The position numbers were made by a program, and so were the translations under genes. Of a DNA stretch of 64,000 bases, positions 4,074 through 21,773 are shown in pieces; the first letter of the stretch is position 1, and every line of letters begins with the position of its first letter. Location: the IMG/VR virus record IMGVR_UViG_3300019776_000324, positions 1-64,000 of that record. One strand, 5' to 3'. The notes below the pieces were generated by a model. It was not told where the DNA came from and did no database searches. It saw only the letters and a program-made list of their open reading frames with translations.

Positions 4074-4094
4074 TAATTCAGTTAATTGTATAAT
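4066..4094 (+). promoter_or_regulatory. Sigma70-type promoter
   Basis: TTGACT-17bp-TATAAT overlapping the upstream stop codon. Confidence 0.8.
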
Positions 4095-4145: not shown

Positions 4146-5231
4146 ATGTCAGATACAAGAACAGTCAATTCAGTTCAAGCTCGTAAAAGTTTACTGAAAG
4201 CATTCAAAAAACAACGCCCATTATTTTTATGGGGTCCTCCTGGTATTGGTAAGTCAGAGTTGGTTGCTGACTTGACTGAAGAACTAGGTGGTGCTATGAT
4301 CGACCTTCGGTTGGGTCAGATGGAGCCGACAGATATTCGCGGTATTCCTTTTTATAACAAAGATTTGGGCAAGATGGATTGGGCTGAGCCTATCGATTTG
4401 CCAGATGCAGAATTTGCTGGACAGTATCCGATTGTAGTCTTGTTCTTGGACGAGATGAATTCAGCGGCACCATCAGTTCAAGCGGCTGCTTATCAGTTGA
4501 TTTTGAATCGTCGTATTGGCAAGTATAAAATGCCAGACAATGTAGTTATTGTGGCCGCAGGTAATCGCGAGTCAGACAAAGGTGTTACATATCGTATGCC
4601 TACTCCGCTTGCAAATCGTTTCATTCACCAAGAGATGAAGGTAGACTTTGCGGCTTGGCAAGATTGGGCTGTTAACCACGGCATCCATAAAGATGTGGTT
4701 GGTTACTTGACCTACGCTAAACAGGACTTGAATGAGTTCGATGCTAAATCAGCTAGTCGTGCATTCGCTACTCCACGCTCATGGACATTCGTATCACAGT
4801 TGTTAGAAGACGAAGATGGTGATGATGACACTATCATGAACTTGGTTGCAGGCACTGTAGGTGAAGGACTTGCTGTTAAGTTTATGGCACACCGCAAGAT
4901 TGCTGGTAAAATGCCTAAGCCAGAAGATATCTTGGCTGGTAAGGAAAAAGAGCTGAATGTCAAAGAAGTATCGGCTATGTACAGCTTGGTAATCTCCATG
5001 TGCTACGAGCTTAAAGCGGCTGTAGAAGCCAAGGTAGAGGACAAGAAGTTCCATGAAATGGCAGATAACTTCTTTGCCTACATGATGAAGAACTTTGAAA
5101 CTGAACTTGTGGTAATGGGAGCCCGCATAGCACTTACGACCTATAATTTGCCATTCCAACCAACTAAGTTGAAAAACTTTGATGAGTTCCATAAAAGATA
5201 CGGCAAGTATATTTTACAAGCCAGTGCATAG
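4146..5231 (+). CDS. MoxR-like/dynein-related AAA+ ATPase
   Basis: Walker A GPPGIGKS, Walker B LFLDEMN, sensor AAGN, Arg finger 'PLANRF' and 'TPRSW'. Confidence 0.9.
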   Translation: MSDTRTVNSVQARKSLLKAFKKQRPLFLWGPPGIGKSELVADLTEELGGAMIDLRLGQMEPTDIRGIPFYNKDLGKMDWAEPIDLPDAEFAGQYPIVVLFLDEMNSAAPSVQAAAYQLILNRRIGKYKMPDNVVIVAAGNRESDKGVTYRMPTPLANRFIHQEMKVDFAAWQDWAVNHGIHKDVVGYLTYAKQDLNEFDAKSASRAFATPRSWTFVSQLLEDEDGDDDTIMNLVAGTVGEGLAVKFMAHRKIAGKMPKPEDILAGKEKELNVKEVSAMYSLVISMCYELKAAVEAKVEDKKFHEMADNFFAYMMKNFETELVVMGARIALTTYNLPFQPTKLKNFDEFHKRYGKYILQASA

Positions 5232-5282
5232 TAAACAACTTGGGTGGTGCCACCCAAGGCTGTGTCTCACTACCCAGGTTGG

Positions 5283-5310
5283 CAAAAGGAGCTTAGGCTC
5301 CTTTTGTTTT
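5283..5310. terminator. Bidirectional rho-independent terminator
   Basis: CAAAAGGAGC-ttag-GCTCCTTTTG followed by TTTT; the loop holds the stop of the minus-strand NUMOD3 ORF. Confidence 0.7.
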
Positions 5311-5465
5311 GCCCTTTAATGCTTCACTAATCTTACGCTTGGTCTCTTCACTCATTGTATAGGTCCGACCTTTCATTGGCGATACACGACCTTTTAATTT
5401 AGCTGATCTTTTAGCATTCGCTTCTTCGGTTTGCGGTTTACCAGGCAACCCATTTTTAGCCCAGG
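5293..5465 (-). pseudogene. Homing-endonuclease remnant (NUMOD3 DNA-binding repeats only)
   Basis: 'QTEEANAKRSAKLKG' and 'MSEETKRKISEALKGK' are NUMOD3-type motifs. No nuclease domain; the upstream part is the antisense of a promoter. Confidence 0.6.
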
Positions 5466-5494
5466 TTGACCTGAAATTAGCTCTATAGTATAAT
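5466..5494 (+). promoter_or_regulatory. Sigma70-type promoter driving the small-ORF array
   Basis: TTGACC-17bp-TATAAT. Confidence 0.8.
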
Positions 5495-5525
5495 AGTGTT
5501 ATCATGTTAAAAACAGGGGCAAATA

Positions 5526-5753
5526 ATGACTAAACTATTAATAGATCGCCTAGATAGATTAACTCTCCTGGTATCTGAATACTATTTTCCTCAATGGATC
5601 GAACAAGGGTATGGAGCACCAAAAGAAAGCTCCTGGCGTCAAATATTTGAATGGTGTTTAGACTGTGGCATTGAGTGTAATAGAGGTCGTGGCACTACCT
5701 TAAGATTTCATAAAGAAACAGATGTTACAGCATTTATGTTAAAGTGGAGTTGA
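5526..5753 (+). CDS. Small FxL[RK]W-family protein
   Basis: Ends DVTAFMLKWS; internal WC motif. Confidence 0.75.
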   Translation: MTKLLIDRLDRLTLLVSEYYFPQWIEQGYGAPKESSWRQIFEWCLDCGIECNRGRGTTLRFHKETDVTAFMLKWS

Positions 5754-5755
5754 AA

Positions 5756-5956
5756 ATGAACTATTTAAGTATAGCACAGATTGATGAAGTAAAGATGGAA
5801 ATGGATGACCTGCTGATACCTATCGCAAAGATTAGTTTAAGTATTCGTCCTGAAGATATACAAAATATGATAATGATGCACGGCCCAGACTTTATGCCAG
5901 AACTACAGCGTATGATTGGCGAAATTGTATTGGATTCTTATAAGACTCAGGATTAA
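5756..5956 (+). CDS. Hypothetical protein
   Basis: ATG 5756 follows a GGAG SD formed by the upstream W-S codons. Confidence 0.65.
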   Translation: MNYLSIAQIDEVKMEMDDLLIPIAKISLSIRPEDIQNMIMMHGPDFMPELQRMIGEIVLDSYKTQD

Positions 5957-6002
5957 ACAGGCTGTGTCGCTACAGCCTTCCACCTTTACTATTATGTTCA
6001 CT

Positions 6003-6332
6003 ATGAAATTTAAAATCGTCAAAACTGATCGTAGGCATACTGCCAATCAAGTATTCCGGTACTATGTTGAGCCTGCATACGAATTAGGTGTTGGCCGTGA
6101 CGAGCGTATTGAAATGTTTAAAGAGTTGCGAGCTTGGTGTTGGGAACAGTTTGGGCCTGGTTGCGAGCGTGATTATGTTGTGCTACACCCGGTTCCTGCG
6201 GGCATAGATGGTCAGTGTCGAATGGCAACTCAAGAGCGTTGGGCTTGGCTTACTACAACTGACACTAATTCGGTGTTGAGAATCTATTTTAACGATGATG
6301 AACTAGCGTGGTTTAAACTCAAGTGGGCATGA
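6003..6332 (+). CDS. Small FxL[RK]W-family protein
   Basis: 'WCWEQFGPG...DDELAWFKLKWA'; start uncertain (5994 or 6003). Confidence 0.75.
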   Translation: MKFKIVKTDRRHTANQVFRYYVEPAYELGVGRDERIEMFKELRAWCWEQFGPGCERDYVVLHPVPAGIDGQCRMATQERWAWLTTTDTNSVLRIYFNDDELAWFKLKWA

Positions 6333-6538
6333 TGATTCGAATTGCCAATTTACAACAGCGTGATGGAATCCATCACTGGCTCAAAGATCGTGGAATCTAT
6401 CGTGATCTTTATGAGTTGGGTTATGACTTTGGTGATTCATCTGACGAGGGCATAGAACTCTGGCCCGTGCTTAGAATCAACGACGGTGTGTTATCAGCAA
6501 CTGATGTAACTGAATTTATATTAAGGTTTGGTGTATGA
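6329..6538 (+). CDS. Small FxL[RK]W-family protein
   Basis: Ends TEFILRFGV; ATGA overlap. Confidence 0.7.
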   Translation: MMIRIANLQQRDGIHHWLKDRGIYRDLYELGYDFGDSSDEGIELWPVLRINDGVLSATDVTEFILRFGV

Positions 6539-6735
6539 CCCAGGTTGAATGTCACATACCTATGAGCCGTATGGAGGAGATTACAGAATGGTTGCACAAC
6601 AACATCGGCCCAGGTTGGATACACCCCGACACACATGTTTGGAGTTATGGTGAGCTGTATGAATCAGTTCATTTTAGCCGTGAACAGGATGCCGTTATGT
6701 TTAAACTAAAATGGGCTGGAAATGAAAACATATAA
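6535..6735 (+). CDS. Small FxL[RK]W-family protein
   Basis: 'WLHNNIGPGW...EQDAVMFKLKWAG'. Confidence 0.75.
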   Translation: MTQVECHIPMSRMEEITEWLHNNIGPGWIHPDTHVWSYGELYESVHFSREQDAVMFKLKWAGNENI

Positions 6736-7075
6736 GCGTACAATTATTATCCGTGAAAGAGATCTTTGTAGTCTAATGTACAAGACTATTAAAAAAGGCC
6801 TGTTTGACCGCATTGATGTAGAACCGTTAACCTATCAAGAAATACAAAACGAAATATTAATAGATACATTAAAGGGCACACCAACTCGTAAGTGGAGTGT
6901 ATTGCCTGATGTGTATGAAACACTAATGTACAAGGAAGGTAACTTGTACAACAAGCAGTATTTGTCCTGGTTGTTGACCATGGATTATCCTAACGGACAG
7001 ATCTATGTGCAGAGCCGTTCAGGCGAACCCACTGATCCTTTACACCGTGTGACTTTTGAGAAAGACTATGCGTAA
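6722..7075 (+). CDS. Hypothetical protein
   Basis: Coupled ORF in array; no motif. Confidence 0.7.
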   Translation: MKTYKRTIIIRERDLCSLMYKTIKKGLFDRIDVEPLTYQEIQNEILIDTLKGTPTRKWSVLPDVYETLMYKEGNLYNKQYLSWLLTMDYPNGQIYVQSRSGEPTDPLHRVTFEKDYA

Positions 7076-7313
7076 ACGCCTACACGAATCTCGTTACTTT
7101 AGACTGCAACAAGAGCACACAGCCAAAGGTCGCAAGTTCTATAGAATTGTATTCTGGAAACTGTGGCCACTGAGCGTAGACGACGAAGAACGAATTAGAG
7201 ATGTAATAGATCCACAGCGTAGCCGAAGTGGTCGAAATGGAACCAATTGGAAATATACTAATCGCAAGGAAGCAGAACAAATGTATAGTATGTTGTTGTT
7301 AAGGTGGAGTTAA
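7068..7313 (+). CDS. Small FxL[RK]W-family protein
   Basis: Ends EAEQMYSMLLLRWS. Confidence 0.7.
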   Translation: MRKRLHESRYFRLQQEHTAKGRKFYRIVFWKLWPLSVDDEERIRDVIDPQRSRSGRNGTNWKYTNRKEAEQMYSMLLLRWS

Positions 7314-7315
7314 AG

Positions 7316-7675
7316 ATGAAACATTATTTGTCATTTATTCAGTGGTTAATTCAGCGTATGTTTCGGACTGTTATATCAGGACCAGTTAGACTTTTTAAAT
7401 GGTATAAAGGTCGACTATATTACGAAACATTTTTAACCATACTGGCATCCATTGTTGGTTGGGCCATGCTGTTATTTGCAGGTGCTGTCGCATCAACTAC
7501 TAATGTTAATGGTAAGTTGGTAGTTGAGACTGATGATGTTTGGCCATTTATAATAGCTTTGTTTGCGCCGCCTGTGGTGTTTATTGTGGCTTGCGTTTCT
7601 ATTCAATATGATCATTACTGTTCAGAGCTAGAGCGCACTATGAAAACTCTTAAAGGCAAGCATGACAGTATATAA
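7316..7675 (+). CDS. Hypothetical membrane protein (2 TM)
   Basis: Two hydrophobic segments; SD comes from upstream AAGGTGGAG. Confidence 0.7.
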   Translation: MKHYLSFIQWLIQRMFRTVISGPVRLFKWYKGRLYYETFLTILASIVGWAMLLFAGAVASTTNVNGKLVVETDDVWPFIIALFAPPVVFIVACVSIQYDHYCSELERTMKTLKGKHDSI

Positions 7676-7865
7676 AGCAAAGATGCCAGAAGCATGGGCT
7701 CGTATGGAATGGTGTCGAGCTCAGTTCGGTGGCGAAGGTGAACCAAATTGGGAAAAGTATGGCGGAGTTGATATTGCCCATGGACTACGCTGGTGGCGTA
7801 GACAAGGCTACTTGTTCTTTCGCAATGAACGAGATTTTGTCCTATACTGTTTGAGGTGGGCATGA
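7662..7865 (+). CDS. Small FxL[RK]W-family protein
   Basis: 'WCRAQFG...ERDFVLYCLRWA'. Confidence 0.75.
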   Translation: MTVYKAKMPEAWARMEWCRAQFGGEGEPNWEKYGGVDIAHGLRWWRRQGYLFFRNERDFVLYCLRWA

Positions 7866-8227
7866 AGATTAAAGAATTTTACCATGAGTTTGAAATGCTA
7901 GTGCGACCAAGTTCACGCAGGTTGCGTCGTATGAAAAATCCTGGATACAGATCCGATGTATGGAATGCCTATATCGATGATTCTATGATATATGACATCA
8001 GTAATGTTGCTGAAGAAGTTGAGTGTGTGGAGGTGCTCATGCCTGCGGACCGTCTTGAAGAGTTGGAACAACTATTAAAACATTATGAAAAAATGGAAGA
8101 ATCGCATCAGCACAGGCATGTTGTTATTAGTAAGCTGAGAGAGGACGAGCGAGTGCGTATTAAAAATCCTGCTGTTCGTCAAGCATGGGAACACTACTTA
8201 ACATTATTAAACTTGTGCAGAGATTAA
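7862..8227 (+). CDS. Hypothetical protein
   Basis: ATGA-coupled; helical C-terminus 'NPAVRQAWEHYLTLLNL'. Confidence 0.7.
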   Translation: MKIKEFYHEFEMLVRPSSRRLRRMKNPGYRSDVWNAYIDDSMIYDISNVAEEVECVEVLMPADRLEELEQLLKHYEKMEESHQHRHVVISKLREDERVRIKNPAVRQAWEHYLTLLNLCRD

Positions 8228-8228
8228 G

Positions 8229-8471
8229 ATGAATAGCAAAGATAGACGCAAAGATCGTAGAGCATGGAAGTATTCTGTAGCTACTCCTCATGTAATGATG
8301 ACTGGAGTTGCGGGCATGCAAGACGAGTATGATGCAATGTGGAACTGGTGCAAGGAAAACTTTGGTAGCGATGCTCGTTACTGTGGATGGCGTGATCGTG
8401 AGTGGGGTGAGCGTTGGGAGTTTAACGACAGTAAGAAAGCTGCACTATTTTCTCTAAGGTGGAGTAGATGA
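8229..8471 (+). CDS. Small FxL[RK]W-family protein
   Basis: 'WCKENFG...KKAALFSLRWSR'; N-terminus is paralogous to 12569. Confidence 0.75.
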   Translation: MNSKDRRKDRRAWKYSVATPHVMMTGVAGMQDEYDAMWNWCKENFGSDARYCGWRDREWGERWEFNDSKKAALFSLRWSR

Positions 8472-8803
8472 AACTAGAACCTTGGCAGGCAGAAGTATTT
8501 GTTAAGTATTGCGAGAATGATATCAAAATGACCATGAATATAGGCCGTCAGACGGGCAAATCAACATGGGTAAGTATGTTAAGGAACTTTATGGAACGAC
8601 CAGAAAAACGATTTCAATTAGTATCGGGAATCTATAACTACTCACTAATGATCGAAGACTACATGTGGTGGGCTGACAATGAGCGTGAAATACTTAACTG
8701 GATGGCGGAGAACTTACCGCGCGGCATTGAACATCAACAGGGCATGATTCTTACATTTGATACAGACAAACAGCGTATGATGTTCTTGTTGAGGTGGGCA
8801 TGA
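8468..8803 (+). CDS. FxL[RK]W-family protein with N-terminal P-loop-like fragment
   Basis: 'LEPWQ...GRQTGKST' then ...QRMMFLLRWA. Confidence 0.7.
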   Translation: MKLEPWQAEVFVKYCENDIKMTMNIGRQTGKSTWVSMLRNFMERPEKRFQLVSGIYNYSLMIEDYMWWADNEREILNWMAENLPRGIEHQQGMILTFDTDKQRMMFLLRWA

Positions 8804-9075
8804 CAGTAAAGTATGTTGACGGTTGGTACGAAATAGAGCATCTCCCGCCTAAAGAGATCTGGGCAGTTCATAGCAAAGAATGGGCATGGAAACCTAGACG
8901 AAATTGGTGTAGGAAAACATTTGCTCCGGGTGAATGGGAAATGCGCGATCCTATATATCATTACAGTATAGGTCCTAGCGGACCCGGTAAACGAATACTA
9001 TCAACTACACCATTAACCTGGCGATTCAAGCGTGAAGCTGATGCCTTGTTGTTTACCTTAAGGTGGGCCAAATGA
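8800..9075 (+). CDS. Small FxL[RK]W-family protein
   Basis: 'WCRKTF...EADALLFTLRWAK'. Confidence 0.75.
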   Translation: MTVKYVDGWYEIEHLPPKEIWAVHSKEWAWKPRRNWCRKTFAPGEWEMRDPIYHYSIGPSGPGKRILSTTPLTWRFKREADALLFTLRWAK

Positions 9076-9353
9076 ATGTTGCTATCCAGCGTGTAACCGA
9101 TATACTTGAAAATTTAATAGCCGAAGAGGCCGCAAAAGAAATGCAAGCAAGTATGGACTATGATGTGCTATGTGAAGTAATGATACCATTTGGTTATACT
9201 GCTGTCCAAATTGAGTACGGCAACAACAAGCGGTGGATTGATGTCATGGCATGGGTGGACAGCAACCGTGTTGGTGATTATCAAGAGCACAAAGGTAAAT
9301 GGTTGTTTAAAAATGAACAAGATGCTATAATGTTTAAGTTGAGGTGGGCCTGA
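9072..9353 (+). CDS. Small FxL[RK]W-family protein
   Basis: Ends EQDAIMFKLRWA. Confidence 0.75.
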   Translation: MNVAIQRVTDILENLIAEEAAKEMQASMDYDVLCEVMIPFGYTAVQIEYGNNKRWIDVMAWVDSNRVGDYQEHKGKWLFKNEQDAIMFKLRWA

Positions 9354-9544
9354 TGTTTGATGAAAAGAATCGTGTTATAGTATTATCCGCTGGCAGTACA
9401 CAACAGGAGAAACTTGATTGGTGTTGTGATCATTTGGCAGGAACGGTTATGTGCCATCCTATCACTTACGGTCTTGATGATGCTGAGATATGGTATTTTG
9501 AAACGGGTGAAGAATCTACTATGTTTGCGTTAAGGTGGGCATGA
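9353..9544 (+). CDS. Small FxL[RK]W-family protein
   Basis: 'WCCDHLAG...EESTMFALRWA'; TGATG overlap. Confidence 0.75.
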   Translation: MFDEKNRVIVLSAGSTQQEKLDWCCDHLAGTVMCHPITYGLDDAEIWYFETGEESTMFALRWA

Positions 9545-9780
9545 AGATAGAAACTACATGGGATAACCTTAATAAGGTCCCTTGGACAGCAATTAACCGA
9601 GCTGGTGACTATTATCATACGCATGTTAGATCTACAAAGGGTGCTTTCATTGATAGATTAAAGGCCGGTGCCGAATATAGCGCCTGGATGCGAAACAATT
9701 GGGGAATACACCACGAGCCTTTGGAATTCAAAATAGTCGATGAGAAAAAATACACCATGTTCTTGTTGAGGTGGGCATGA
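9541..9780 (+). CDS. Small FxL[RK]W-family protein (DEKKY subtype)
   Basis: Ends IVDEKKYTMFLLRWA. Confidence 0.75.
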   Translation: MKIETTWDNLNKVPWTAINRAGDYYHTHVRSTKGAFIDRLKAGAEYSAWMRNNWGIHHEPLEFKIVDEKKYTMFLLRWA

Positions 9781-10007
9781 AAGTAAAGAAAACCGATCCA
9801 ACCTTGTTTGTTGATCCGTATGGAGAAGCCAAACAGAAGTTGTTGAACCGAGGCTATGTTGCTATACCAGTGACTAAGAATCATAACTGGACCGGCATTC
9901 ATGAATGGTGCAAACAATATCTACACTTTGACTACACCTGGTTTGGTTTAGAATTTTGGTTTGCTGACGAACAAGATGCTGTGTTATTTCAGTTGAGGTG
10001 GGCATAA
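9777..10007 (+). CDS. Small FxL[RK]W-family protein
   Basis: 'WCKQY...EQDAVLFQLRWA'. Confidence 0.75.
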   Translation: MKVKKTDPTLFVDPYGEAKQKLLNRGYVAIPVTKNHNWTGIHEWCKQYLHFDYTWFGLEFWFADEQDAVLFQLRWA

Positions 10008-10177
10008 TGTCACTTAATCAAGATTATGCAGTTTCGTGTAAAAACATAACCAACGACCAATGGAACTGGTTGTGCAATACCATAGGAACTCCTACAAAAG
10101 ATTGGCACTATAACTTTGCACATATTTGGTTCTATAAAGAAGAACATAAGACTCTTTGGCTGTTGAGGTGGGCATAA
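10007..10177 (+). CDS. Small FxL[RK]W-family protein (56 aa, missing from ORF track)
   Basis: Translated by hand: MSLNQDYAVSCKNITNDQWNWLCNTIGTPTKDWHYNFAHIWFYKEEHKTLWLLRWA; TAATG overlap. Confidence 0.75.
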   Translation: MSLNQDYAVSCKNITNDQWNWLCNTIGTPTKDWHYNFAHIWFYKEEHKTLWLLRWA

Positions 10178-10178
10178 C

Positions 10179-10427
10179 ATGGCACAATTTTATCAAGGAC
10201 CACACTTTTGGGACAAGAGTACTTACGAAGTTACTGTAAAGACTACTCGGTATCGCGTTCGCCAAGTGTGGATTGATGATATGATCAAGTGGGCTAAAGA
10301 ACGAGAAATAAGCATTCACTGGCAAGGCGAAAGCACTCATGTCCACAACGATGATGAATGGCACGAAGCACACTTCTGCATTTACGACAGCAATGATCGT
10401 ATGTTATTTGCGTTGAGGTGGGCATGA
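10179..10427 (+). CDS. Small FxL[RK]W-family protein
   Basis: Ends NDRMLFALRWA. Confidence 0.75.
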   Translation: MAQFYQGPHFWDKSTYEVTVKTTRYRVRQVWIDDMIKWAKEREISIHWQGESTHVHNDDEWHEAHFCIYDSNDRMLFALRWA

Positions 10428-10723
10428 GTCTATCAAATCAAGCAAAGAATATAAAAGGTCACATGGATCTGTTTCCAGAAAAGTGGAACGATAACCGTGC
10501 CAAACGAGATAGATTTTGGGCGATGTTAAGACGGGTCAAATCAGACTATTTTACCCTAGTCAAAGATTTGGGCAACGATCCCGACGATGGAAGTTTTTAT
10601 ACATACATGCAGGATACCTATGGTATAAAACTAATATTAACAAACCGTGGTGAGATCACAGACATGTTTGAAGTTACAGATGAAAAGAAACAAATGATGT
10701 TTATTTTAAAATACGGATCATGA
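10424..10723 (+). CDS. FxL[RK]W-family protein (DEKK subtype)
   Basis: 'YGIKL...DEKKQMMFILKYGS'. Confidence 0.75.
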   Translation: MSLSNQAKNIKGHMDLFPEKWNDNRAKRDRFWAMLRRVKSDYFTLVKDLGNDPDDGSFYTYMQDTYGIKLILTNRGEITDMFEVTDEKKQMMFILKYGS

Positions 10724-10944
10724 TTAGAGTTAGTACCAAAGACGAAGCGTTTATGCAAGCATATCACAATGCTCGTCGTGCCTTACCGGTTGAAACTCTA
10801 GAAAGCCCCAGGCAGTATGGTGCTCGCTGGCGAGAAACATATTGTTGCAGAGTAGATGCAAACGGAAATAATAAGATAGACGAAACTTATTATGTCTTTG
10901 ACAACGATGAAGATTACACTTGGTTTATGTTACGATGGGGTTAA
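10720..10944 (+). CDS. Small FxL[RK]W-family protein
   Basis: Ends EDYTWFMLRWG. Confidence 0.75.
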   Translation: MIRVSTKDEAFMQAYHNARRALPVETLESPRQYGARWRETYCCRVDANGNNKIDETYYVFDNDEDYTWFMLRWG

Positions 10945-11159
10945 AGATCGCTGTCAAAGATTCAGCCGAAGCATTTGGCCTTAAAATGGAAGTAGACCGT
11001 CATGGCCTGCGTCCTGGTGCAGGATATACTTGGCGTTATACTCCAGCGGTAAGAGATTACTTTGGCCTCATAGCCGAAGAAGAGGATGTGGCTCGAGTAG
11101 AGTTTGAGTTTGACGATCCAAAGTGGGCAACATATTTTCAATTACGGTGGGCACAATGA
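10935..11159 (+). CDS. Small FxL[RK]W-family protein
   Basis: Ends PKWATYFQLRWAQ; start uncertain. Confidence 0.7.
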   Translation: MGLKIAVKDSAEAFGLKMEVDRHGLRPGAGYTWRYTPAVRDYFGLIAEEEDVARVEFEFDDPKWATYFQLRWAQ

Positions 11160-11470
11160 CAACTACAACAGTATATAATCTAGCAGATGGTAGTGTAGTA
11201 GAGCTAAAAACCAATCCAGGTGCAGCACCTATTGTATTCCTTAATGGTGTTATACAACAACCTGGAACTTATTCCTTGTCAGGAACAAATGTCATATTTG
11301 ATACACCGCAAAAAACATGGCAATGGCAACAGCATTATGCTTGGTTACCAAAGCGCATTAATGGTAAGTGGTATTGGTTTACTTATGTTTATCGTTACTG
11401 GTGTCTATCGCCTGGCGGAGGATTTTGGCGATATGGCGACGACTTTGACAAATTAAAGGACACCAAATGA
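11156..11470 (+). CDS. Chimeric hypothetical protein (virion-type beta repeat plus Trp-rich domain)
   Basis: 'VFLNGVIQQPGTYSLSGTNVIF' then 'WQQHYAWLPKRINGKWYW'. Confidence 0.65.
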   Translation: MTTTTVYNLADGSVVELKTNPGAAPIVFLNGVIQQPGTYSLSGTNVIFDTPQKTWQWQQHYAWLPKRINGKWYWFTYVYRYWCLSPGGGFWRYGDDFDKLKDTK

Positions 11471-11724
11471 GTTGGAAACCCATGGTAGACTATGAAGAAT
11501 CGGTTCCTCTAAAGCGTCGAGCAACCAAGAAAAAGGTTTGGGATGAATTGACTCAAACCTGGAAAGATGCTACAATATGGACTGTAATCTATAATCGTGA
11601 GCTAAAGGATTGGTTAGAAGAGACCTATCCTGGCAAGCAAGGGTGGGGCACTGCCTGGAGCGATAGCAAGATTATCATGGAAGAACCAGTTTACTTACAT
11701 TATTGTTTAAAGTTTGGAGCATGA
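11467..11724 (+). CDS. Small FxL[RK]W-family protein
   Basis: Ends VYLHYCLKFGA. Confidence 0.7.
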   Translation: MSWKPMVDYEESVPLKRRATKKKVWDELTQTWKDATIWTVIYNRELKDWLEETYPGKQGWGTAWSDSKIIMEEPVYLHYCLKFGA

Positions 11725-11951
11725 TGTCACCTTGGGAATACTTACGCGAGTGGAATCTAATGGAAAAGCCGGATTCACGCCGAGCCAGTAGAGAGTGGAT
11801 CAATCAAGAAATGCAGAGTCACTGGCCAGGTCCGTATCGTGTGGAACGATGCCAATCACGCTATGCTGGCACAGGTTGGCGTATTGATTACGAGATTAAA
11901 TTTGCGGATCCTCAAGAAGAAACAATGTTTAGATTAAAGTTTGGAGCATAA
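11721..11951 (+). CDS. Small FxL[RK]W-family protein
   Basis: Ends EETMFRLKFGA. Confidence 0.7.
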   Translation: MMSPWEYLREWNLMEKPDSRRASREWINQEMQSHWPGPYRVERCQSRYAGTGWRIDYEIKFADPQEETMFRLKFGA

Positions 11952-12334
11952 TGGATAGAGATTTAGAAGACGATCTTAAGAACGATGCCTTGGTCATGGA
12001 AAAGATCAAGGATCGTCGCTATGCTCAAAATGTCTATGCCGCACTGTGCAACATGCGTTGGCAACCTGAGGAAGTATGGCCTGTGCTCACTGATGAATAC
12101 TGGTCATGTAGTTGGCGCAGTGCTGGTGGGCTTGTAGCTGATCTTAGAGTTGACTTTAATGAAGATTACATGGATTGGTATTGTTCAGGTATTAGTGGAG
12201 GATTTGATTTTGAATCTGATGACGAAGAGCGTAATAAAGGATATGTTGCAGAAGGGGAAGTAACAGATGAAATTCGTGAAGATTTTGCTCGCTTGGGTTG
12301 GCATCCAAGTCCATGGCCTAAAGACGAGGTATAA
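11951..12334 (+). CDS. Hypothetical protein
   Basis: 'YAQNVYAALCN...WSCSWRSAGGLVA...YMDWYCSG'. Confidence 0.75.
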   Translation: MDRDLEDDLKNDALVMEKIKDRRYAQNVYAALCNMRWQPEEVWPVLTDEYWSCSWRSAGGLVADLRVDFNEDYMDWYCSGISGGFDFESDDEERNKGYVAEGEVTDEIREDFARLGWHPSPWPKDEV

Positions 12335-12338
12335 TAAT

Positions 12339-12572
12339 ATGTTTGTTAAAGATGTTGAAAAAATGATTATCGGCAGTTTAAAAGAAGTTATGAAGGATCG
12401 CAATCTTTTTTATAACTCAACTGTGGGGCCGGAGTACTGTCACTTAACCAACGAGGGTGCAAAGGCTATTACTGACATGTGTAATGTCTTACTACCTAGG
12501 TTGCTTAAAGCACAAGAGCTAGAAGATATTGAACGCAGTAAAATGATAGTTATGCAAGAACTTAAAAAATGA
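12339..12572 (+). CDS. Hypothetical protein
   Basis: ATG 12339 follows a GAGGT SD. Confidence 0.7.
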   Translation: MFVKDVEKMIIGSLKEVMKDRNLFYNSTVGPEYCHLTNEGAKAITDMCNVLLPRLLKAQELEDIERSKMIVMQELKK

Positions 12573-12835
12573 ACAGTCACGACCGTAGAGTTGTAGAGCG
12601 AGCATGGCCACACCATGTTTATCTGCACGATGGTGACAGTTTAGTTGAAGATTGTTTTGAATGGTTACACACAAATTTTGGTTCATGCCGTTGGACTGGC
12701 AAGCGCAATCCGCGCTGGTGCTGGCGTCCAGATATGGGTCAAGGCCCTAACTTTGTTATAATGCGACATGGTGTAGAAATATTCTTCCGTAAGAAAGAAG
12801 ATTACGCTTGGTTTATGTTAAAGTGGGATAGATGA
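12569..12835 (+). CDS. Small FxL[RK]W-family protein
   Basis: 'WLHTNFG...EDYAWFMLKWDR'. Confidence 0.75.
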   Translation: MNSHDRRVVERAWPHHVYLHDGDSLVEDCFEWLHTNFGSCRWTGKRNPRWCWRPDMGQGPNFVIMRHGVEIFFRKKEDYAWFMLKWDR

Positions 12836-13116
12836 ATTACTATTACGAAATTAGTGAAAAGTATGATGGCACTGTGTTTGGCGACCGGTGGCGTTACTGG
12901 TGCTTGGCCAACTGTAGCCCAGCTGAAGGTGGCAAAATGTGTTTTAAAACACACGACGAGTTTGTAGCTCGTAGCAGTCGTGTATGGTTAGAAAATGCCA
13001 ATGGTGTTTATCAAATCAAGCCCGACTGGTATGGCATGCGTGGGCAAGTGGATCCACATGAGTTTACTATGATTAAACTAAAATCACGAGTGTATAAATG
13101 GTGGTACGATGAATGA
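12832..13116 (+). CDS. Hypothetical protein (degenerate FxLK motif)
   Basis: 'HEFTMIKLKSR' near the C-terminus. Confidence 0.7.
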   Translation: MNYYYEISEKYDGTVFGDRWRYWCLANCSPAEGGKMCFKTHDEFVARSSRVWLENANGVYQIKPDWYGMRGQVDPHEFTMIKLKSRVYKWWYDE

Positions 13117-13450
13117 TGATGACATAAAAGCCTTGCATAACAAGCTACGAGGTTACAGCAAACAACTACCTGGGCAAGCCGGCGACGAATACTATGAAAG
13201 TCAGGCCGCTAGATTAGATACTATCATAGGTGGCGACACTGGCCACTTCCAACGCTTGCAACGAGTACGCAACGAATGGGACGAGCTAGCTAGAGCTGTG
13301 CCTGTTGGACAAGGTTTCTTAACATTCTACGACTATGTAAAAGAGTACTATGGTATCAAACTAATGTATGACGGCGATGATCTAAAGTTAGAATATAGTA
13401 TTATAGACGAAAAGAAGTACACTGTGTTCTTATTGAAGTTTGATAGATAA
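13109..13450 (+). CDS. FxL[RK]W-family protein (DEKKY subtype)
   Basis: 'YGIKL...IIDEKKYTVFLLKFDR'. Confidence 0.75.
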   Translation: MNDDDIKALHNKLRGYSKQLPGQAGDEYYESQAARLDTIIGGDTGHFQRLQRVRNEWDELARAVPVGQGFLTFYDYVKEYYGIKLMYDGDDLKLEYSIIDEKKYTVFLLKFDR

Positions 13451-13704
13451 TGCATATAAACAATTTTACTTTACCTACTCCGCCGCAGGAATTACTAGAC
13501 AAGTGTATTCAAGTTGCATTTGATGGTGAGGGCCGGTTTATGAGTAAAATGCGCCGCTGGTGTTACGATCATACAGAATCATTTGTATGGGCAGATCGTA
13601 TTGACATGAGCGATAGTAGCTACTGGACCGGCCCGGATGATTATGTAGTGTTTTATTTTTATAAAGAAATTGATGCTACACTATTTAGATTAAAGTGGCT
13701 ATGA
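13450..13704 (+). CDS. Small FxL[RK]W-family protein
   Basis: 'WCYDH...EIDATLFRLKWL'. Confidence 0.75.
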   Translation: MHINNFTLPTPPQELLDKCIQVAFDGEGRFMSKMRRWCYDHTESFVWADRIDMSDSSYWTGPDDYVVFYFYKEIDATLFRLKWL

Positions 13705-13925
13705 TTGATCGTAATCCACTGTTAACCATTCCTGTAAAAACCTACGCTCATTATAGTGAGTGCGAACCTTGGCTGTTGGCCAATGTAGGTGGCTGGAATG
13801 ACTTATGGTGGAGAGATTTTCAAGATGTTGCTATGCATGTGGCCTTAGGCGAAGGAACACAACCAGACTGCTATTGGTTTTGTCGTGAACAAGATGCCTT
13901 GATGTTTAGGTTAAAATTTCAATGA
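13701..13925 (+). CDS. Small FxL[RK]W-family protein
   Basis: 'WLLANVG...EQDALMFRLKFQ'. Confidence 0.75.
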   Translation: MIDRNPLLTIPVKTYAHYSECEPWLLANVGGWNDLWWRDFQDVAMHVALGEGTQPDCYWFCREQDALMFRLKFQ

Positions 13926-14143
13926 TATGGTCCATGATCATTGCCAAGGTCTTGACTACAGTGATGTCGTGGTTAGATGCTGGCAATCTACGCAACAAGG
14001 TTTACAAGCAGGCTGAAGAAGCAGAAATCATGATGACTGCCTTAGAAGATATTGAACGCATGAGCAAGGAAGACCGGATCAAACACTATGCTCGTACAGC
14101 AATTAACACAGTAAAAGGATTGCCCATTGAAGACGACTATTAA
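13922..14143 (+). CDS. Hypothetical protein
   Basis: ATGA-coupled ORF. Confidence 0.7.
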   Translation: MIWSMIIAKVLTTVMSWLDAGNLRNKVYKQAEEAEIMMTALEDIERMSKEDRIKHYARTAINTVKGLPIEDDY

Positions 14144-14468
14144 GCACAACTTGATTATCTTTCATCGTCCTAAAGAGTGGGATGAACTACAACAACGATT
14201 AATAGATGAATATGGTCGTAGTGTTATTCTGGTTCGAGACAAGTGTCGTCGTGAGCTGGGATTTACTCCCCGCCATCACAGGGGTTTAATTCCTTACCTA
14301 GACAAATGGGGACACGGCGTGGTAAGAAACTCTGGTGCTACCAAAGAGCAAGCTGACAAGTTTATTGCAGAAAATAAACACAAAATGGCCTACGACAATC
14401 AGGTACATTTAGACTTCTATAGCGAAGCAGCAATGAGCTGGTTTGTGCTAAAATATCTTAATGACTAG
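14127..14468 (+). CDS. FxL[RK]W-family protein
   Basis: Ends EAAMSWFVLKYLND; TTG start after AAGGA. Confidence 0.7.
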   Translation: MKTTIKHNLIIFHRPKEWDELQQRLIDEYGRSVILVRDKCRRELGFTPRHHRGLIPYLDKWGHGVVRNSGATKEQADKFIAENKHKMAYDNQVHLDFYSEAAMSWFVLKYLND

Positions 14469-14471
14469 CGG

Positions 14472-14500
14472 TTGACCAGAAATTCCATTTCGGTTATAAT
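14472..14500 (+). promoter_or_regulatory. Sigma70-type promoter (probable leaderless mRNA)
   Basis: TTGACC-17bp-TATAAT; ATG is 6 nt downstream and has no SD. Confidence 0.8.
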
Positions 14501-14506
14501 AGTAGT

Positions 14507-14797
14507 ATGAAAGTGATTAAATTAGACCGAAGATACGCCGGCTTTCCTAAGTGGAAGTATGCCTGCCAATTTCCTGTAAGAAATCACAATTATCGAAAAG
14601 AATATTTTAACTACGTTCGGACATTTAAAGAATTGTTTGGTGCAGAATCTCAGTCAAACCCTGACCGTAATACCGGCGATTGGTCTAAGCCTTTTTGGAT
14701 TTATAACGAGCACTGGTGCACTGACTTTCCTAAACAGCGAATTCTTGTTAAAGATCAAGCGGTTATAAGCATGATCATGCTGAAAATGCCCGGTTGA
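14507..14797 (+). CDS. Hypothetical protein (degenerate family member)
   Basis: Starts 'MKVIKLDRR' like 6003 ('MKFKIVKTDRR'); ends SMIMLKMPG. Confidence 0.7.
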   Translation: MKVIKLDRRYAGFPKWKYACQFPVRNHNYRKEYFNYVRTFKELFGAESQSNPDRNTGDWSKPFWIYNEHWCTDFPKQRILVKDQAVISMIMLKMPG

Positions 14798-14822
14798 CTC
14801 GAAATGCCCAAAATGCTATAAT
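14794..14822 (+). promoter_or_regulatory. Sigma70-type promoter
   Basis: TTGACT-17bp-TATAAT; the spacer (gaaatgcccaaaatgc) nearly matches the 3664 promoter. Confidence 0.85.
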
Positions 14823-14852
14823 ATTACATATAGTTAGAAATTAGGAGCAGAA

Positions 14853-15143
14853 ATGGACAAGATTTACTTCGTACTTGGGTTTACTTTGTTTTGGACTGTG
14901 GCTATTGTTCTGGCAGGTATTGTTCTTATGTATGTTTACCATGCTGTTAAAACCGTTCCAATGGCAATAGATTTTTTTCGCTGGTACCGATTTTATGCTA
15001 TTCGACATAATCCTGAATGGGAATCTCGAGTAGGTATTGTTCACAATTATATTGCGGCATTTATTAGTGTTTGGGATTACAACGAAAATACCCGTATCAC
15101 TCACCATGCTGGTGTAGTTTACAAACCCTACGCATGGAAGTGA
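14853..15143 (+). CDS. Hypothetical membrane protein
   Basis: N-terminal TM; AGGAG SD. Confidence 0.7.
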   Translation: MDKIYFVLGFTLFWTVAIVLAGIVLMYVYHAVKTVPMAIDFFRWYRFYAIRHNPEWESRVGIVHNYIAAFISVWDYNENTRITHHAGVVYKPYAWK

Positions 15144-15172
15144 TTGACCAAATAATCCATTTATAGTATAAT
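15144..15172 (+). promoter_or_regulatory. Sigma70-type promoter
   Basis: TTGACC-17bp-TATAAT-AGTTGTATAGT. Confidence 0.85.
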
Positions 15173-15200
15173 AGTTGTATAGTTAATAAAAGGAGCCCAT

Positions 15201-15530
15201 ATGTTAGAACGCAATTTAGATACTAGAGAAGCACCTACAAAATGGTGGGCGGCGCAAGATGCTCGCATGCGTAACTTGGCAAATAAAAGTCACTACGATG
15301 AGCAAACTCAAATTCGCGTTGAACGCATGATCATGGCCCTGGGTCTTTGCTACAATGCAAAAGGTATTCACGAAGCGTTTGGCAAGCGGGGTGTGAGTAT
15401 CAAAGTAGACCGTCCTACTTCAATCAAAGATCGCGTGAATCTCAAATTGCTAGAACAAGATTGGGAAGAGGCGGGTGTAACTAAAAAGGTAAGCCCACAG
15501 GGCGTTATCTATAGATTCTCTGCAGATTGA
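15201..15530 (+). CDS. Hypothetical protein
   Basis: AAGGAG SD and its own promoter. Confidence 0.75.
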   Translation: MLERNLDTREAPTKWWAAQDARMRNLANKSHYDEQTQIRVERMIMALGLCYNAKGIHEAFGKRGVSIKVDRPTSIKDRVNLKLLEQDWEEAGVTKKVSPQGVIYRFSAD

Positions 15531-15555
15531 CCTATAATTCCATTAATAGTATAAT
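15527..15555 (+). promoter_or_regulatory. Sigma70-type promoter
   Basis: TTGACC-17bp-TATAAT overlapping the upstream TGA. Confidence 0.85.
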
Positions 15556-15583
15556 AGTAGTATAGTTAATAACAAAGGCAGAT

Positions 15584-16867
15584 ATGACCACTAGCACACA
15601 AAACAAAAAAGAATCAGACAAGTTTAAAAACTTATTGGGTCCGACTAACCCTAAAGTTGATGCAGATGTTCGTGAGAAGTTGATTACTGCTCGTGTGGGC
15701 TTGTTACTTCGTGCAAGTTTCTTTGGTAACTTGGCTACTCGCTTAAAGTTAGTCAATGCTGATGAATGGTGTCCAACAGCCGCAACTGATGGTCGTCACT
15801 TTTACTACAATACCCGTTTCGTAAACATGCTCAAGCCAAAAGAGATTGAGTTCTTGTTTGGTCATGAGGTCTTGCACTGTGTTTACGATCACTTTGGCCG
15901 TCGTGGCGATCGTGACCATCAACTGTTTAACATTGCCAATGACTATTGCGTAAACGCAGACTTGAAGAAACATCGTGTGGGCGAGTTTATTACATCAGTA
16001 CCTTGCTTGTACGATGCCAAGTACGAAGGTATGAGTTCAGAAGAGATTTATGATCTCTTGTATGAAAATGCTGAAAAGATCAATATCAGTGATTTGATTG
16101 ACAAATTGCTCGATGATCACTTGGATGGTAATGGTGACGGGGAAGGTGAAGATGGCGATGAGAAAGATGGCAAAGGCAAGGGTCGCCCTAAACTAAGCGC
16201 AGAAGAGCGTCAACAGATCAAAGATGAGATCAAAGAAGCTGTATTGGCTGCGGCTGCCGCTAGCGACGGTGCAGGTAACTTGCCAGCAGGTGTCAAGCGT
16301 ATCATTGAAGATATGACTGCACCTAAAATGAACTGGCGCGAGTTGTTGCGTATGCAATTAGAGTCAACTATCAAGACTGACTACACTTGGATGCGCTCTA
16401 GCCGTAAAGGCTGGCACATGGATGCTATTATGCCTGGACAGAAGTTTGATGAGCTTATTGATATTGCTGTTAGTATTGACGCTTCAGGCAGTATGGGCGA
16501 AGCTATGCTCAAAGATATCTTGTCAGAAGTGCAAGGTATTGTAGACAGTTTCCCAGCTTACAAACTGCACATTGTATCGTTTGATACTCAGATTTACAAT
16601 CCACAGACTTACGACAGTGAGAACTTGGACAATCTAGTAGACTACGAAATCCACGGTGGTGGCGGTACAGACTTTGATTGTGTGTTTGAATACTTCAAAG
16701 AAAATGACATCCAACCCAAGCGTCATATCATGTTTACTGACGGTTACCCATGTGGTAGTTGGGGTGATGAGAACTACTGTGATACTGTGTTTATCATGCA
16801 CGGTACTACTAGCATTGTTCCACCGTTTGGTCAGTACGCTTACTATGAGGAAGAAAAGAGTCACTAA
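15584..16867 (+). CDS. DUF2201-type metallopeptidase plus vWA-domain protein (MoxR partner)
   Basis: 'TAATDG', HEXXH 'HEVLH', acidic/Gly linker, MIDAS 'DASGSM', 'GGGGTDF' and 'FTDG'. Confidence 0.85.
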   Translation: MTTSTQNKKESDKFKNLLGPTNPKVDADVREKLITARVGLLLRASFFGNLATRLKLVNADEWCPTAATDGRHFYYNTRFVNMLKPKEIEFLFGHEVLHCVYDHFGRRGDRDHQLFNIANDYCVNADLKKHRVGEFITSVPCLYDAKYEGMSSEEIYDLLYENAEKINISDLIDKLLDDHLDGNGDGEGEDGDEKDGKGKGRPKLSAEERQQIKDEIKEAVLAAAAASDGAGNLPAGVKRIIEDMTAPKMNWRELLRMQLESTIKTDYTWMRSSRKGWHMDAIMPGQKFDELIDIAVSIDASGSMGEAMLKDILSEVQGIVDSFPAYKLHIVSFDTQIYNPQTYDSENLDNLVDYEIHGGGGTDFDCVFEYFKENDIQPKRHIMFTDGYPCGSWGDENYCDTVFIMHGTTSIVPPFGQYAYYEEEKSH

Positions 16868-21749: not shown

Positions 21750-21767
21750 ACATAATTCTGCTATAAT
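21739..21767 (+). promoter_or_regulatory. Sigma70-type promoter (probable leaderless mRNA)
   Basis: TTGTAA-17bp-TATAAT; ATG is 6 nt downstream. Confidence 0.6.
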
Positions 21768-21773
21768 AGCAGT

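What the first reader, a model, noticed from the sequence alone, without database searches (positions are those of the whole stretch)
4146..16867. The small-ORF array sits between a MoxR-like AAA+ ATPase and its HEXXH-vWA partner
Seen: the AAA+ gene (4146-5231) and the HEVLH + MIDAS-vWA gene (15584-16867) bracket the array about 10 kb apart, each with its own sigma70 promoter. Established: MoxR-type ATPases work with vWA adaptors, and the two genes are normally adjacent. Inference: either the locus is just an insertion hotspot, or the FxLRW proteins are clients or specificity adaptors of an ATP-driven chaperone/protease, with the conserved acidic 'E.D' plus hydrophobic C-terminus as its recognition tag. 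The latter would be a three-part phage proteolysis or remodelling system.
Basis: inference. Interest (0 to 1): 0.7.

Follow-up and report, generated by a model that had tools for sequence, protein, structure and literature searches.

The report
Small-gene array splits phage chaperone pair
In this 344-kb freshwater jumbo phage, a fast-changing array of about 26 small genes from a large uncharacterised viral family has built up in the spacer between two normally adjacent chaperone-type genes, and comparison with other phages shows a shared location rather than a shared machine.

Summary
4146-5231 is a MoxR-like AAA+ ATPase. 15584-16867 is a DUF2201 HExxH-peptidase/vWA protein with an intact MIDAS site. 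Each has a near-consensus sigma70-type promoter. The 10,352 bp between them hold 23-26 paralogous small genes ending F-x-L-[RK]-[WYF].

The three-part chaperone/protease idea is not supported.
- Spacer length: in 60 close relatives it runs from 34 bp with no family genes to 6.5 kb with 12.
- Zero-copy relatives: they keep both enzymes and carry small family clusters about 105-110 kb away.
- Phage Phosso: 37 members are scattered over its genome.
- Two phages have the pair but no family member.
- Unrelated phage contigs: arrays of 6-20 members sit with no MoxR or DUF2201 gene within 10 kb.
- Other lineages: unrelated genes, including homing endonucleases, occupy the same spacer.

The C-terminal "tag" lies in a confidently predicted terminal helix. 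Its [RK]-W codons (AGG/AAG TGG) also act as the Shine-Dalgarno site for the next gene, whose start overlaps the stop. AGG supplies 13 of 15 motif arginines, against 2.6% of arginine codons genome-wide.

Best reading: a hypervariable, probably early, translationally coupled cassette array that accreted in a permissive spacer. The function of the small proteins is unknown. The enzyme pair was already described in 2021.

The parts
4066..4094 (+). sigma70-type promoter (TTGACT-N17-TATAAT, 11 of 12) for the AAA+ gene
   Evidence: consensus match only
4146..5231 (+). MoxR-like AAA+ ATPase, 361 aa
   Evidence: Pfam AAA, AAA_3 and AAA_5 above cutoffs; PHROG 1297 6e-97; 51% identical to the PA5oct ATPase
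5239..5311 (.). two hairpins after the AAA+ stop (CTTGGGTGG..CCACCCAAG and AAAAGGAGC-TTAG-GCTCCTTTTGTTTT). They look like a bidirectional intrinsic terminator that insulates the AAA+ gene from the array.
   Evidence: first hairpin; sequence read directly (second hairpin with its T-run)
5293..5505 (-). 70-aa ORF consisting only of NUMOD3 repeats, a decayed homing-endonuclease DNA-binding remnant
   Evidence: Pfam NUMOD3 1.3e-10; no catalytic domain in any frame
5466..5494 (+). sigma70-type promoter (11 of 12) at the head of the array
   Evidence: 62-nt promoter/leader module shared with the sites at 15142 and 15525
5526..14468 (+). about 9-kb polycistron of about 33 tightly packed small genes. 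23-26 belong to the F-x-L-[RK]-[WYF] family (56-113 aa). About 8 interspersed genes are not family members, for example the transmembrane ORF 7304-7675 and the acidic ORF 11951-12334.
7851..10427 (+). sub-block with nine copies of the 15-nt junction TTRAGGTGGGCMTRA. It encodes L-R-W-A-stop, an embedded GAGGTG Shine-Dalgarno, and the overlapping ATG of the next gene.
14472..15555 (+). three single-gene units, each behind its own 11-of-12 promoter (14472, 14794, 15144), followed by the vWA promoter at 15527-15555. The genes are 14507-14797 (weak family likeness), 14853-15143 (membrane ORF) and 15201-15530.
15584..16867 (+). DUF2201_N HExxH metallopeptidase fused to a DUF2201 vWA domain with an intact MIDAS site, 427 aa
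   Evidence: 44% identical to Phosso and 42% to PA5oct homologues
21756..22124 (+). divergent family member (…YIVARLAEQDQTYWTLKW…), about 5 kb beyond the vWA gene. Its subfamily is conserved 2-5 kb downstream of the vWA gene in relatives.

Best explanation
The AAA+ and vWA-peptidase genes are an ancestrally adjacent chaperone/co-chaperone pair, already described for 'group 2.2' jumbo phages. In this freshwater lineage their intergenic spacer became an accretion zone for a hyper-diverse family of small alpha/beta proteins. The family is widespread in phage metagenomes and forms tandem arrays at many different genomic sites.

Here the array is one long unit behind a strong host-type (probably early) promoter. 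It is held together by translational coupling. Each gene ends …F-x-L-[RK]-W-x-stop, and the [RK]-W codons are chosen as A(G/A)G TGG. This places a Shine-Dalgarno-like GAGGTG five bases before the next ATG, which overlaps the stop (ATGA or TAATG). The conserved C-terminus is therefore both the last, packed helix of the fold and the junction of an expression cassette. It is not a free degradation tag.

Cassettes are gained and lost between close relatives. The shared junction sequence is a plausible substrate for that recombination; this step is inferred.

What the small proteins do is inferred only. They share a scaffold, their surfaces diverge widely (pI 4.4-10.7), they sit behind an early-type promoter and they turn over rapidly. 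This pattern fits a library of host-interaction, takeover or counter-defence factors acting independently of the flanking enzymes.
For: Shown:
- Pair identity, and adjacency in outgroups.
- Spacer length: 34 bp to 6,452 bp in 60 relatives whose AAA+ is 82-94% identical.
- Family hits in those loci: 263 in the spacer, 2 upstream and 13 downstream.
- Phylogeny: a tree of AAA+ plus vWA shows copy number from 0 to 23 is structured by descent. Zero-copy genomes are nested at three places among 1-2-copy relatives, and both enzymes are always kept.
- Collinearity: relatives' arrays are collinear subsets of this one. Paralogues are only about 30-40% identical, and most lack a close orthologue in relatives.
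- Family away from the pair: clusters about 105-110 kb away in zero-spacer genomes; 37 dispersed members in Phosso and 3 remote ones in PA5oct.
- Arrays without the pair: 14, about 20 and 6 members in unrelated contigs with no MoxR or DUF2201 gene within 10 kb.
- Family size: 2,733 clusters at 50% identity, all small proteins.
- Packing: 4-nt or 1-nt overlaps.
- Codon choice: AGG in 13 of 15 motif arginines against 2.6% genome-wide, p = 2e-19. AGG in 37 of 55 tails when the next ATG overlaps against 10 of 43 when it does not, p = 1.7e-5. AAG in 49 of 80 against 11 of 50, p = 1.3e-5.
- Structure: two AlphaFold models (pLDDT 77 and 76) put the motif in a terminal helix with pLDDT about 88-94.
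- Other lineages: unrelated inserts in the same spacer, and a NUMOD3 remnant here.
Against: Within this clade the family is strikingly concentrated in this one spacer, at about 1.6 hits per kb against 0.003-0.035 per kb in the flanks. Descent from a single seeding event explains this but does not prove it.

Phosso, a distant phage, has a family member 198 bp downstream of its vWA gene.

All three units share the same promoter class, so they are probably co-expressed.

No expression data were found. Early timing rests on promoter consensus only. The function of the small proteins is not shown by any result. The recombination role of the junction is inferred.
Confidence: 0.7

Rival explanations
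1. The F-x-L-[RK]-W proteins are clients or interchangeable specificity adaptors of the MoxR-like ATPase and its vWA-peptidase partner. They would be recognised through the acidic E-x-D (MIDAS ligand) and the hydrophobic C-terminus, and the array would sit between the two genes because the three work together.
For: Within this clade, 263 of 278 family hits in the sampled loci lie in the spacer. The same promoter class drives all three units. Phosso has a family member directly after its vWA gene. One unrelated contig (L088) has a different AAA ATPase in the middle of a family array. An E/D is conserved at 75% just before the terminal helix.
Against: Both enzymes are retained in relatives with no array genes in the spacer, and those relatives carry family clusters about 105-110 kb away. 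Phosso's 37 members are dispersed and PA5oct's 3 are remote. Vibrio 2.275.O and SCTP-2 have the pair and no family member. Large arrays exist with no MoxR or DUF2201 gene within 10 kb. The L088 ATPase is not related to this one beyond the P-loop. The C-terminus is a predicted packed helix, and its conservation is partly explained by the embedded ribosome-binding site. The AAA+ gene is insulated from the array by terminator-like hairpins.
Confidence: 0.08
2. The conserved C-terminus is purely a nucleotide-level signal, a ribosome-binding site or recombination junction. The ORFs would then be selfish or decaying cassettes with no protein function.
For: Extreme codon bias at the junction, and a 15-nt repeat present 9 times.
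Against: The amino-acid motif persists with other codons (CGA, CGC, CGG, CGT, AGA, AAA) when no gene follows. F (98%) and L (93%) lie upstream of the Shine-Dalgarno-like bases. A second conserved motif, W-x(5)-G, lies mid-protein. The ORFs stay open across 2,733 divergent clusters. Two members fold to the same confident core.
Confidence: 0.03
3. The array's position is selected for regulation rather than physical interaction. Sitting between two early units would give it a favourable transcriptional or packaging context, without any biochemical link to the pair.
For: Own promoter, terminator-like hairpins upstream, and strong promoter modules repeated across the region.
Against: Other phages place arrays in quite different contexts, such as helicase/DnaB regions. 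With these data this reading cannot be told apart from neutral accretion.
Confidence: 0.12

Closest known systems
MoxR AAA+ / vWA-metallopeptidase pair of group 2.2 jumbo phages (Iyer et al. 2021, PMC7824862; exemplars Atu_ph07 ASV44729.1 and ASV44728.2)
   Same: The same two families. The Atu_ph07 exemplars are direct tblastn hits (37% identity). The gene order is AAA+ then vWA, with HExxH and MIDAS intact.
   Different: Here the two genes are 10.35 kb apart, each has its own promoter, and the AAA+ gene has its own terminator. The published proposal, virion assembly with peptidolytic processing, is untested and says nothing about a third component.
MoxR-vWA chaperone systems with a dedicated client (for example the Acidianus two-tailed virus tail system cited in PMC7824862; RavA-ViaA and CbbQ-CbbO from general knowledge)
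   Same: A MoxR-class ATPase with a vWA partner whose MIDAS site is expected to bind an acidic ligand on a target.
   Different: In those systems the client is a specific, conserved partner. Here the candidate 'clients' are a variable, dispensable and dispersed multigene family that does not co-vary with the pair.
Hyperplastic or hypervariable regions of T4-like and jumbo phages: blocks of small, mostly early, unannotated ORFs between conserved core genes (general knowledge)
   Same: Bounded by conserved genes. Content differs between genomes whose flanking genes are 82-94% identical. Small same-strand ORFs behind host-type promoters. Homing-endonuclease traces.
   Different: This block is dominated by one recognisable paralogous family, 23-26 copies here and up to 37 per genome in Phosso. 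It has a standardised junction in which the conserved C-terminal codons carry the next gene's ribosome-binding site.
Translationally coupled overlapping genes (ATGA and TAATG overlaps; general knowledge)
   Same: Stop/start overlap with a Shine-Dalgarno inside the upstream coding sequence.
   Different: The Shine-Dalgarno is built into a family-defining amino-acid motif ([RK]-W) and repeated about 20 times in series. Codon choice switches with the presence of a downstream gene.

Membership tests
MoxR-class AAA+ ATPase (gene 4146-5231) | AAA+ core with Walker A and B, matching MoxR-type models (AAA_3 / AAA_5) | tested here: met
   AAA_3 scores 28 bits (cutoff 27), AAA_5 26.2 (cutoff 22), AAA 31 (cutoff 21.2). 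GPPGIGKS and LFLDEMN are present. The bpMoxR model falls below its cutoff (21.9 against 27).
MoxR-class AAA+ ATPase (gene 4146-5231) | Genomic pairing with a vWA-domain partner | tested here: met
   The order AAA+ then vWA is conserved in all 60 relatives that hold both genes. They are adjacent (34-163 bp) in eleven close relatives, Phosso and Atu_ph07. In this genome they are 10.35 kb apart.
MoxR-class AAA+ ATPase (gene 4146-5231) | ATP-dependent chaperone or remodelling activity | not testable with these tools
   Needs biochemistry.
DUF2201 vWA-metallopeptidase (gene 15584-16867) | N-terminal DUF2201_N domain with HExxH, and a C-terminal DUF2201 vWA-like domain | tested here: met
   DUF2201_N scores 132 bits (cutoff 23.2) and DUF2201 60.2 bits (cutoff 26.4). 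H94, E95 and H98 are invariant.
DUF2201 vWA-metallopeptidase (gene 15584-16867) | Complete MIDAS motif (D-x-S-x-S … T … D) | tested here: met
   D299, S301, S303, T362 and D386 are invariant in 40 homologues.
   The pair occurs with no spacer copies in eleven relatives. The pair occurs without the family in two phages. Family arrays occur with no pair within 10 kb in four unrelated contigs. Phosso has 37 dispersed copies.
   The single complex prediction returned no verdict.
C-terminal degron or recognition tag for an AAA+ machine (ssrA-like) | An exposed, unstructured C-terminal peptide | tested here: not met
   In two AlphaFold models the motif lies in a terminal helix (residues 76-86 and 65-75) with pLDDT about 87-94. 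This is a prediction only.
Phage hypervariable (hyperplastic) small-ORF region | Bounded by conserved genes, with gene content differing among close relatives | tested here: met
   The spacer runs from 34 bp to 10.35 kb and holds 0-23 family genes, while the flanks stay 70-94% identical. Relatives hold collinear subsets.
Phage hypervariable (hyperplastic) small-ORF region | Early transcription | tested here: inconclusive
   Only consensus host-type promoters were found. No RNA run holds this sequence.

The most novel reading that the evidence does not exclude
The F-x-L-[RK]-W proteins are a diversified library of interchangeable adaptors or substrates that the MoxR-like ATPase and its vWA-peptidase partner load, remodel or cleave. 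The conserved acidic residue would dock on the MIDAS site. This would make a phage-encoded three-part remodelling system whose specificity module expands and contracts between strains.
Probability: 0.07. Interest if true: 0.75.

Novelty: new member of a known kind. Interest (0 to 1): 0.33.

Why it matters
The enzyme pair is already known, and the proposed three-part machine is not supported, so the headline claim loses most of its interest.

Three things remain useful.
- First, a very large virus-only family of small proteins has no Pfam, PHROG or NCBIfam model. It has 2,733 clusters at 50% identity and one structural cluster of about 4,900 members. It reaches 20-37 copies per genome and is a natural target for screens of phage host-takeover or counter-defence factors.
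- Second, it is a clear case of dual coding. A family-defining C-terminal amino-acid motif also carries the ribosome-binding site of the next cassette. This warns against reading conserved termini of arrayed phage genes as protein 'tags'.
- Third, the MoxR/vWA spacer is a recurrent insertion site in several jumbo-phage lineages. That is useful for annotation and for engineering permissive sites.

Tried and rejected
- Megablast of 4000-17000 against cultured phages: no match.
- tblastn of two family members against cultured phages: no match even at E = 0.01. HMM searches were needed instead.
- Pfam, PHROGs and NCBIfam on family members: nothing.
- Fold searches of the model: no informative match. 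PDB Foldseek best E = 0.85. VIA-align wide best Z = 5.3, a generic ferredoxin/ACT/RRM-like beta-alpha-beta-beta-alpha arrangement. AFDB clusters, BFVD and the ESM Atlas returned only uncharacterised viral proteins.
- Complex prediction of the vWA-peptidase with array protein 12569-12832: no verdict, score 0.00. This is neither for nor against binding.
- The look-up of sequencing runs: only freshwater DNA metagenomes holding at most 17% of the words, and no RNA run, so no reads were laid.
- The look-up of encoding contigs for three family representatives: contigs too short to show context.
Absence of the pair there is known only for ±10 kb.
- The classic AAA ATPase inside the L088 array was considered as a second AAA+ link. 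It shows no significant similarity to this ATPase, so it stays an anecdote.
- The small ORFs directly downstream of the vWA gene in Atu_ph07 and in this window (16867-17142) were considered as a conserved third gene. They do not match the family.

Full report
**What the window is.** The window is the first 64 kb of a single 344,244-bp contig. It is a jumbo phage with about 40% G+C. It has no near-identical cultured relative, but hundreds of close relatives exist in freshwater and aquatic metagenomes.

**The two bracketing genes.** ORF 4146-5231 (361 aa) passes the Pfam cutoffs for AAA, AAA_3 and AAA_5 and matches PHROG 1297 'ATPase' at 6e-97. Walker A (GPPGIGKS) and Walker B (LFLDEMN) are visible in the translation. 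ORF 15584-16867 (427 aa) is DUF2201_N, a putative metallopeptidase (132 bits), followed by DUF2201, which is vWA-like (60 bits). HEVLH and the MIDAS residues D299/S301/S303/T362/D386 are invariant in an alignment of 40 homologues. Iyer et al. 2021 described exactly this pair for group 2.2 jumbo phages: a MoxR ATPase plus a vWA protein fused to an N-terminal metallopeptidase. They named the Atu_ph07 proteins that are direct hits here and proposed a role in virion assembly and processing. The pair is therefore known. tblastn finds the ATPase in 852 cultured-phage records and the vWA protein in 782.

**Promoters and terminators.** Sites of the form TTGAC[CT]-N17-TATAAT, matching 11 of 12, lie on the + strand at 4066, 5466, 14472, 14794, 15144 and 15527, each just upstream of an ORF start. 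They belong to a longer repeated promoter/leader module. That module occurs 33 times on the + strand of the genome and once on the - strand. After the AAA+ stop there are two hairpins. The second, AAAAGGAGC-TTAG-GCTCCTTTTGTTTT, looks like a bidirectional intrinsic terminator. The AAA+ gene appears to be a separate, insulated unit.

**The array.** From 5526 to 14468 about 33 + strand ORFs are packed with 4-nt (ATGA) or 1-nt (TAATG) overlaps behind the single strong promoter at 5466. An HMM built iteratively from the window and its relatives recognises 23 of them, and three or four more carry the motif by eye. Six further members lie elsewhere in the genome, at 21756, 183832, 200868, 227364, 228019 and 335975. 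In 273 distinct sequences the family signature has two parts. One is a mid-protein W-x5-G. The other is a C-terminal module [FYLI]-x-F-x-[DN]-[ED]-x-[DE]-x-x-[WML]-F-x-L-[KR]-[WYF], with F 98%, L 93%, K/R 95% and aromatic 100%. Members are 56-113 aa, rich in Trp (5.8%), and range in pI from 4.4 to 10.7. Paralogues are only about 30-40% identical, so these are not recent duplicates. No Pfam, PHROG or NCBIfam model matches.

Eighty IMG/VR loci encode an AAA+ that is 82-94% identical. In the 60 loci that also contain the vWA gene, the order is always AAA+ then vWA. The distance ranges continuously from 34 bp to 6,452 bp. The family HMM gives 263 hits in the spacers (165 kb in total), 2 in 675 kb upstream and 13 in 373 kb downstream. 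Within this clade the array really does live in this spacer. Relatives' arrays are collinear subsets of the window's array, differing by blocks of cassettes. A maximum-likelihood tree of AAA+ plus vWA shows two groups. A 29-genome clade has 0-2 copies, and the zero state is nested at three separate places among 1-2-copy genomes. The remaining 25 metagenomic genomes, which include the window's, have 2-23 copies. Both enzymes are kept whatever the copy number.

**Is the family tied to the pair?** It is not.
- Complete relatives with adjacent AAA+/vWA still carry the family as three-gene tandem clusters about 105-110 kb away (G001 at 17.5-18.3 kb; G002 at 124-125.5 kb).
- Sinorhizobium phage Phosso, whose pair is 163 bp apart, has 37 HMM matches scattered in many clusters over its 469 kb. 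Only one or two lie beside the vWA gene.
- PA5oct has three matches, 50-70 kb from its pair.
- Vibrio phage 2.275.O and Salicola phage SCTP-2 have the pair and no family match.
- Unrelated metagenomic phage contigs carry arrays of 14 (L088), about 20 (L089/L090) and 6 (L092) members. None has a MoxR or DUF2201 gene within 10 kb. These arrays sit beside helicase/DnaB or other genes.
- A profile search of 1.84 billion representatives finds 2,733 clusters at E ≤ 0.001, essentially all 60-150 aa, some being two-domain fusions. The ESM Atlas shows them as virus-only.

**Is the spacer a hotspot?** Independent lineages hold unrelated content at the same place. PA5oct has three hypotheticals and a 498-aa homing-type endonuclease. 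Vibrio 2.275.O has one 503-aa protein. SCTP-2 has a 285-aa protein and a weakly Cpn10-like 92-aa protein. In several RaK2-like phages the vWA gene itself is split into 2-4 pieces, with HNH annotations. In this window a 70-aa minus-strand ORF made only of NUMOD3 repeats (1.3e-10) sits between the AAA+ terminator and the array promoter. It is a decayed homing-endonuclease remnant.

**What the C-terminal 'tag' is.** Two AlphaFold2 models built on family alignments (mean pLDDT 77 and 76) give the same core. It runs strand, helix (carrying W-x5-G), strand, strand, then a terminal helix that contains the whole D-A-x-x-F-x-L-[RK]-W motif. pLDDT in that helix is about 87-94. That does not look like a free tail.

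The codons tell a second story. Most junctions read TTG AGG TGG GCA TGA. AGG supplies 13 of 15 motif arginines in the window, against 2.6% of arginine codons in the genome's long ORFs (binomial p = 2e-19). Across 272 distinct family tails, AGG is used in 37 of 55 cases when the next ATG overlaps or abuts the stop, but in 10 of 43 when it does not (Fisher p = 1.7e-5). For lysine, AAG is used in 49 of 80 against 11 of 50 (p = 1.3e-5). GAGGTG is a perfect match to the extended Shine-Dalgarno (general knowledge of the 16S 3' end). It ends 5 nt or less before the ATG. This is somewhat closer than the genome's usual AGGA/GGAG at -11/-10 but within working range.

The amino-acid motif survives with other codons where no gene follows. 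There is therefore protein-level constraint as well. The motif is a structural helix whose last codons have been recruited as the ribosome-binding site for translational coupling. The resulting 15-nt junction repeat occurs nine times against 0.06 expected. It is also an obvious substrate for cassette gain and loss, though that step is inferred.

**What the small proteins do.** Nothing here shows it. Fold searches give only a generic small alpha/beta arrangement and uncharacterised viral proteins. The supporting pattern is a strong host-type promoter, a conserved scaffold with very divergent surfaces, rapid turnover between strains, many copies and virus-only distribution. From this I commit, at modest confidence, to a library of early host-interaction, takeover or counter-defence factors that act independently of the flanking enzymes.

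**Residual support for a functional link.** Four observations point towards one: the concentration in this spacer within the clade, the Phosso member 198 bp after its vWA gene, the shared promoter class, and an unrelated classic AAA ATPase inside the L088 array. The first is explained by descent from one seeding event followed by in-place growth. The others are single anecdotes. I put the three-part model at about 7-8%.

**Verdict.** The cautious alternative, an insertion hotspot, is supported, and the three-part system is not. The enzyme pair is already known. The array is a new, unannotated but very large family forming a known kind of phage hypervariable region, with an instructive dual-coding junction.

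Noticed in passing
window 2721-3620 (+); also L092:16591-17502: A phage-encoded TctC/'Bug'-family periplasmic tricarboxylate-receptor homologue (Pfam TctC 1.3e-25). An unrelated family-bearing phage contig also carries one. It may be an auxiliary gene and a hint at a betaproteobacterial-type host.
   Followed up: no
window 5293-5505 (-): A 70-aa ORF made only of NUMOD3 repeats, a decayed homing-endonuclease DNA-binding remnant. It lies between the AAA+ terminator and the array promoter, which overlaps its 5' end. A short similar stretch lies at the same place in L009.
   Followed up: partly
window 15584-16867; phage records: PHROG 1314 is labelled 'HNH endonuclease', and many RefSeq records annotate this DUF2201 vWA-peptidase as 'HNH endonuclease' or 'homing endonuclease'. 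The protein has no HNH domain by Pfam. In several RaK2-like phages the gene is split into 2-4 pieces with HNH annotations, which may be the origin of the mislabel.
   Followed up: partly
whole genome (G000), for example 3664, 4066, 5466, 14472, 14794, 15144, 15527, 18237, 18471: A strongly conserved extended promoter/leader module, about 60 nt around TTGACC-N17-TATAAT-AGT. It occurs 33 times on the + strand and once on the - strand, and probably marks the phage's early transcription units.
   Followed up: partly
L088:7806-8825: In an unrelated 155-kb phage contig, a classic AAA ATPase (PF00004, DUF815-like) sits in the middle of a 14-member array of the same small-protein family. It is not similar to the window's MoxR-like ATPase. 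ClpS, ClpP-like and SprT-like genes are also nearby.
   Followed up: partly
P0009, P0030, P0077: Some family members are two-domain fusions, each half ending in the F-x-L-[RK]-W module. This is as expected if a stop/start junction in an array is lost.
   Followed up: no
Sinorhizobium phage Phosso PV764938.1: Phosso carries 37 HMM matches to the family in many clusters over 469 kb. It is the richest cultured carrier seen and a possible experimental system.
   Followed up: no
window 21756-22124 (+) and 2-5 kb downstream of the vWA gene in L024, L025, L031, L063, L071: A divergent subfamily of about 110-120 aa (…YGYRYYIVARL-x-E-x-DQTYFKLKW…) is conserved at a fixed position downstream of the vWA gene across relatives, unlike the variable spacer array.
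   Followed up: no
window 18796-19593 (+): An SPFH/Band 7 domain protein (5.8e-14) in the same early-looking + strand block.
   Followed up: no
L086:3933-4211 (-) (Salicola phage SCTP-2): The 92-aa gene lying between the MoxR and vWA genes of SCTP-2 has a weak Cpn10 (GroES) match (E = 0.0014, below cutoff). A co-chaperonin-like insert in the same spacer would be curious.
   Followed up: no
PA5oct MK797984.1 234078-235193: The PA5oct homologue of the AAA+ ATPase carries the depositor's note 'ESI-MS/MS', so the protein was detected by mass spectrometry. This bears on the proposed assembly role of the pair.
   Followed up: no
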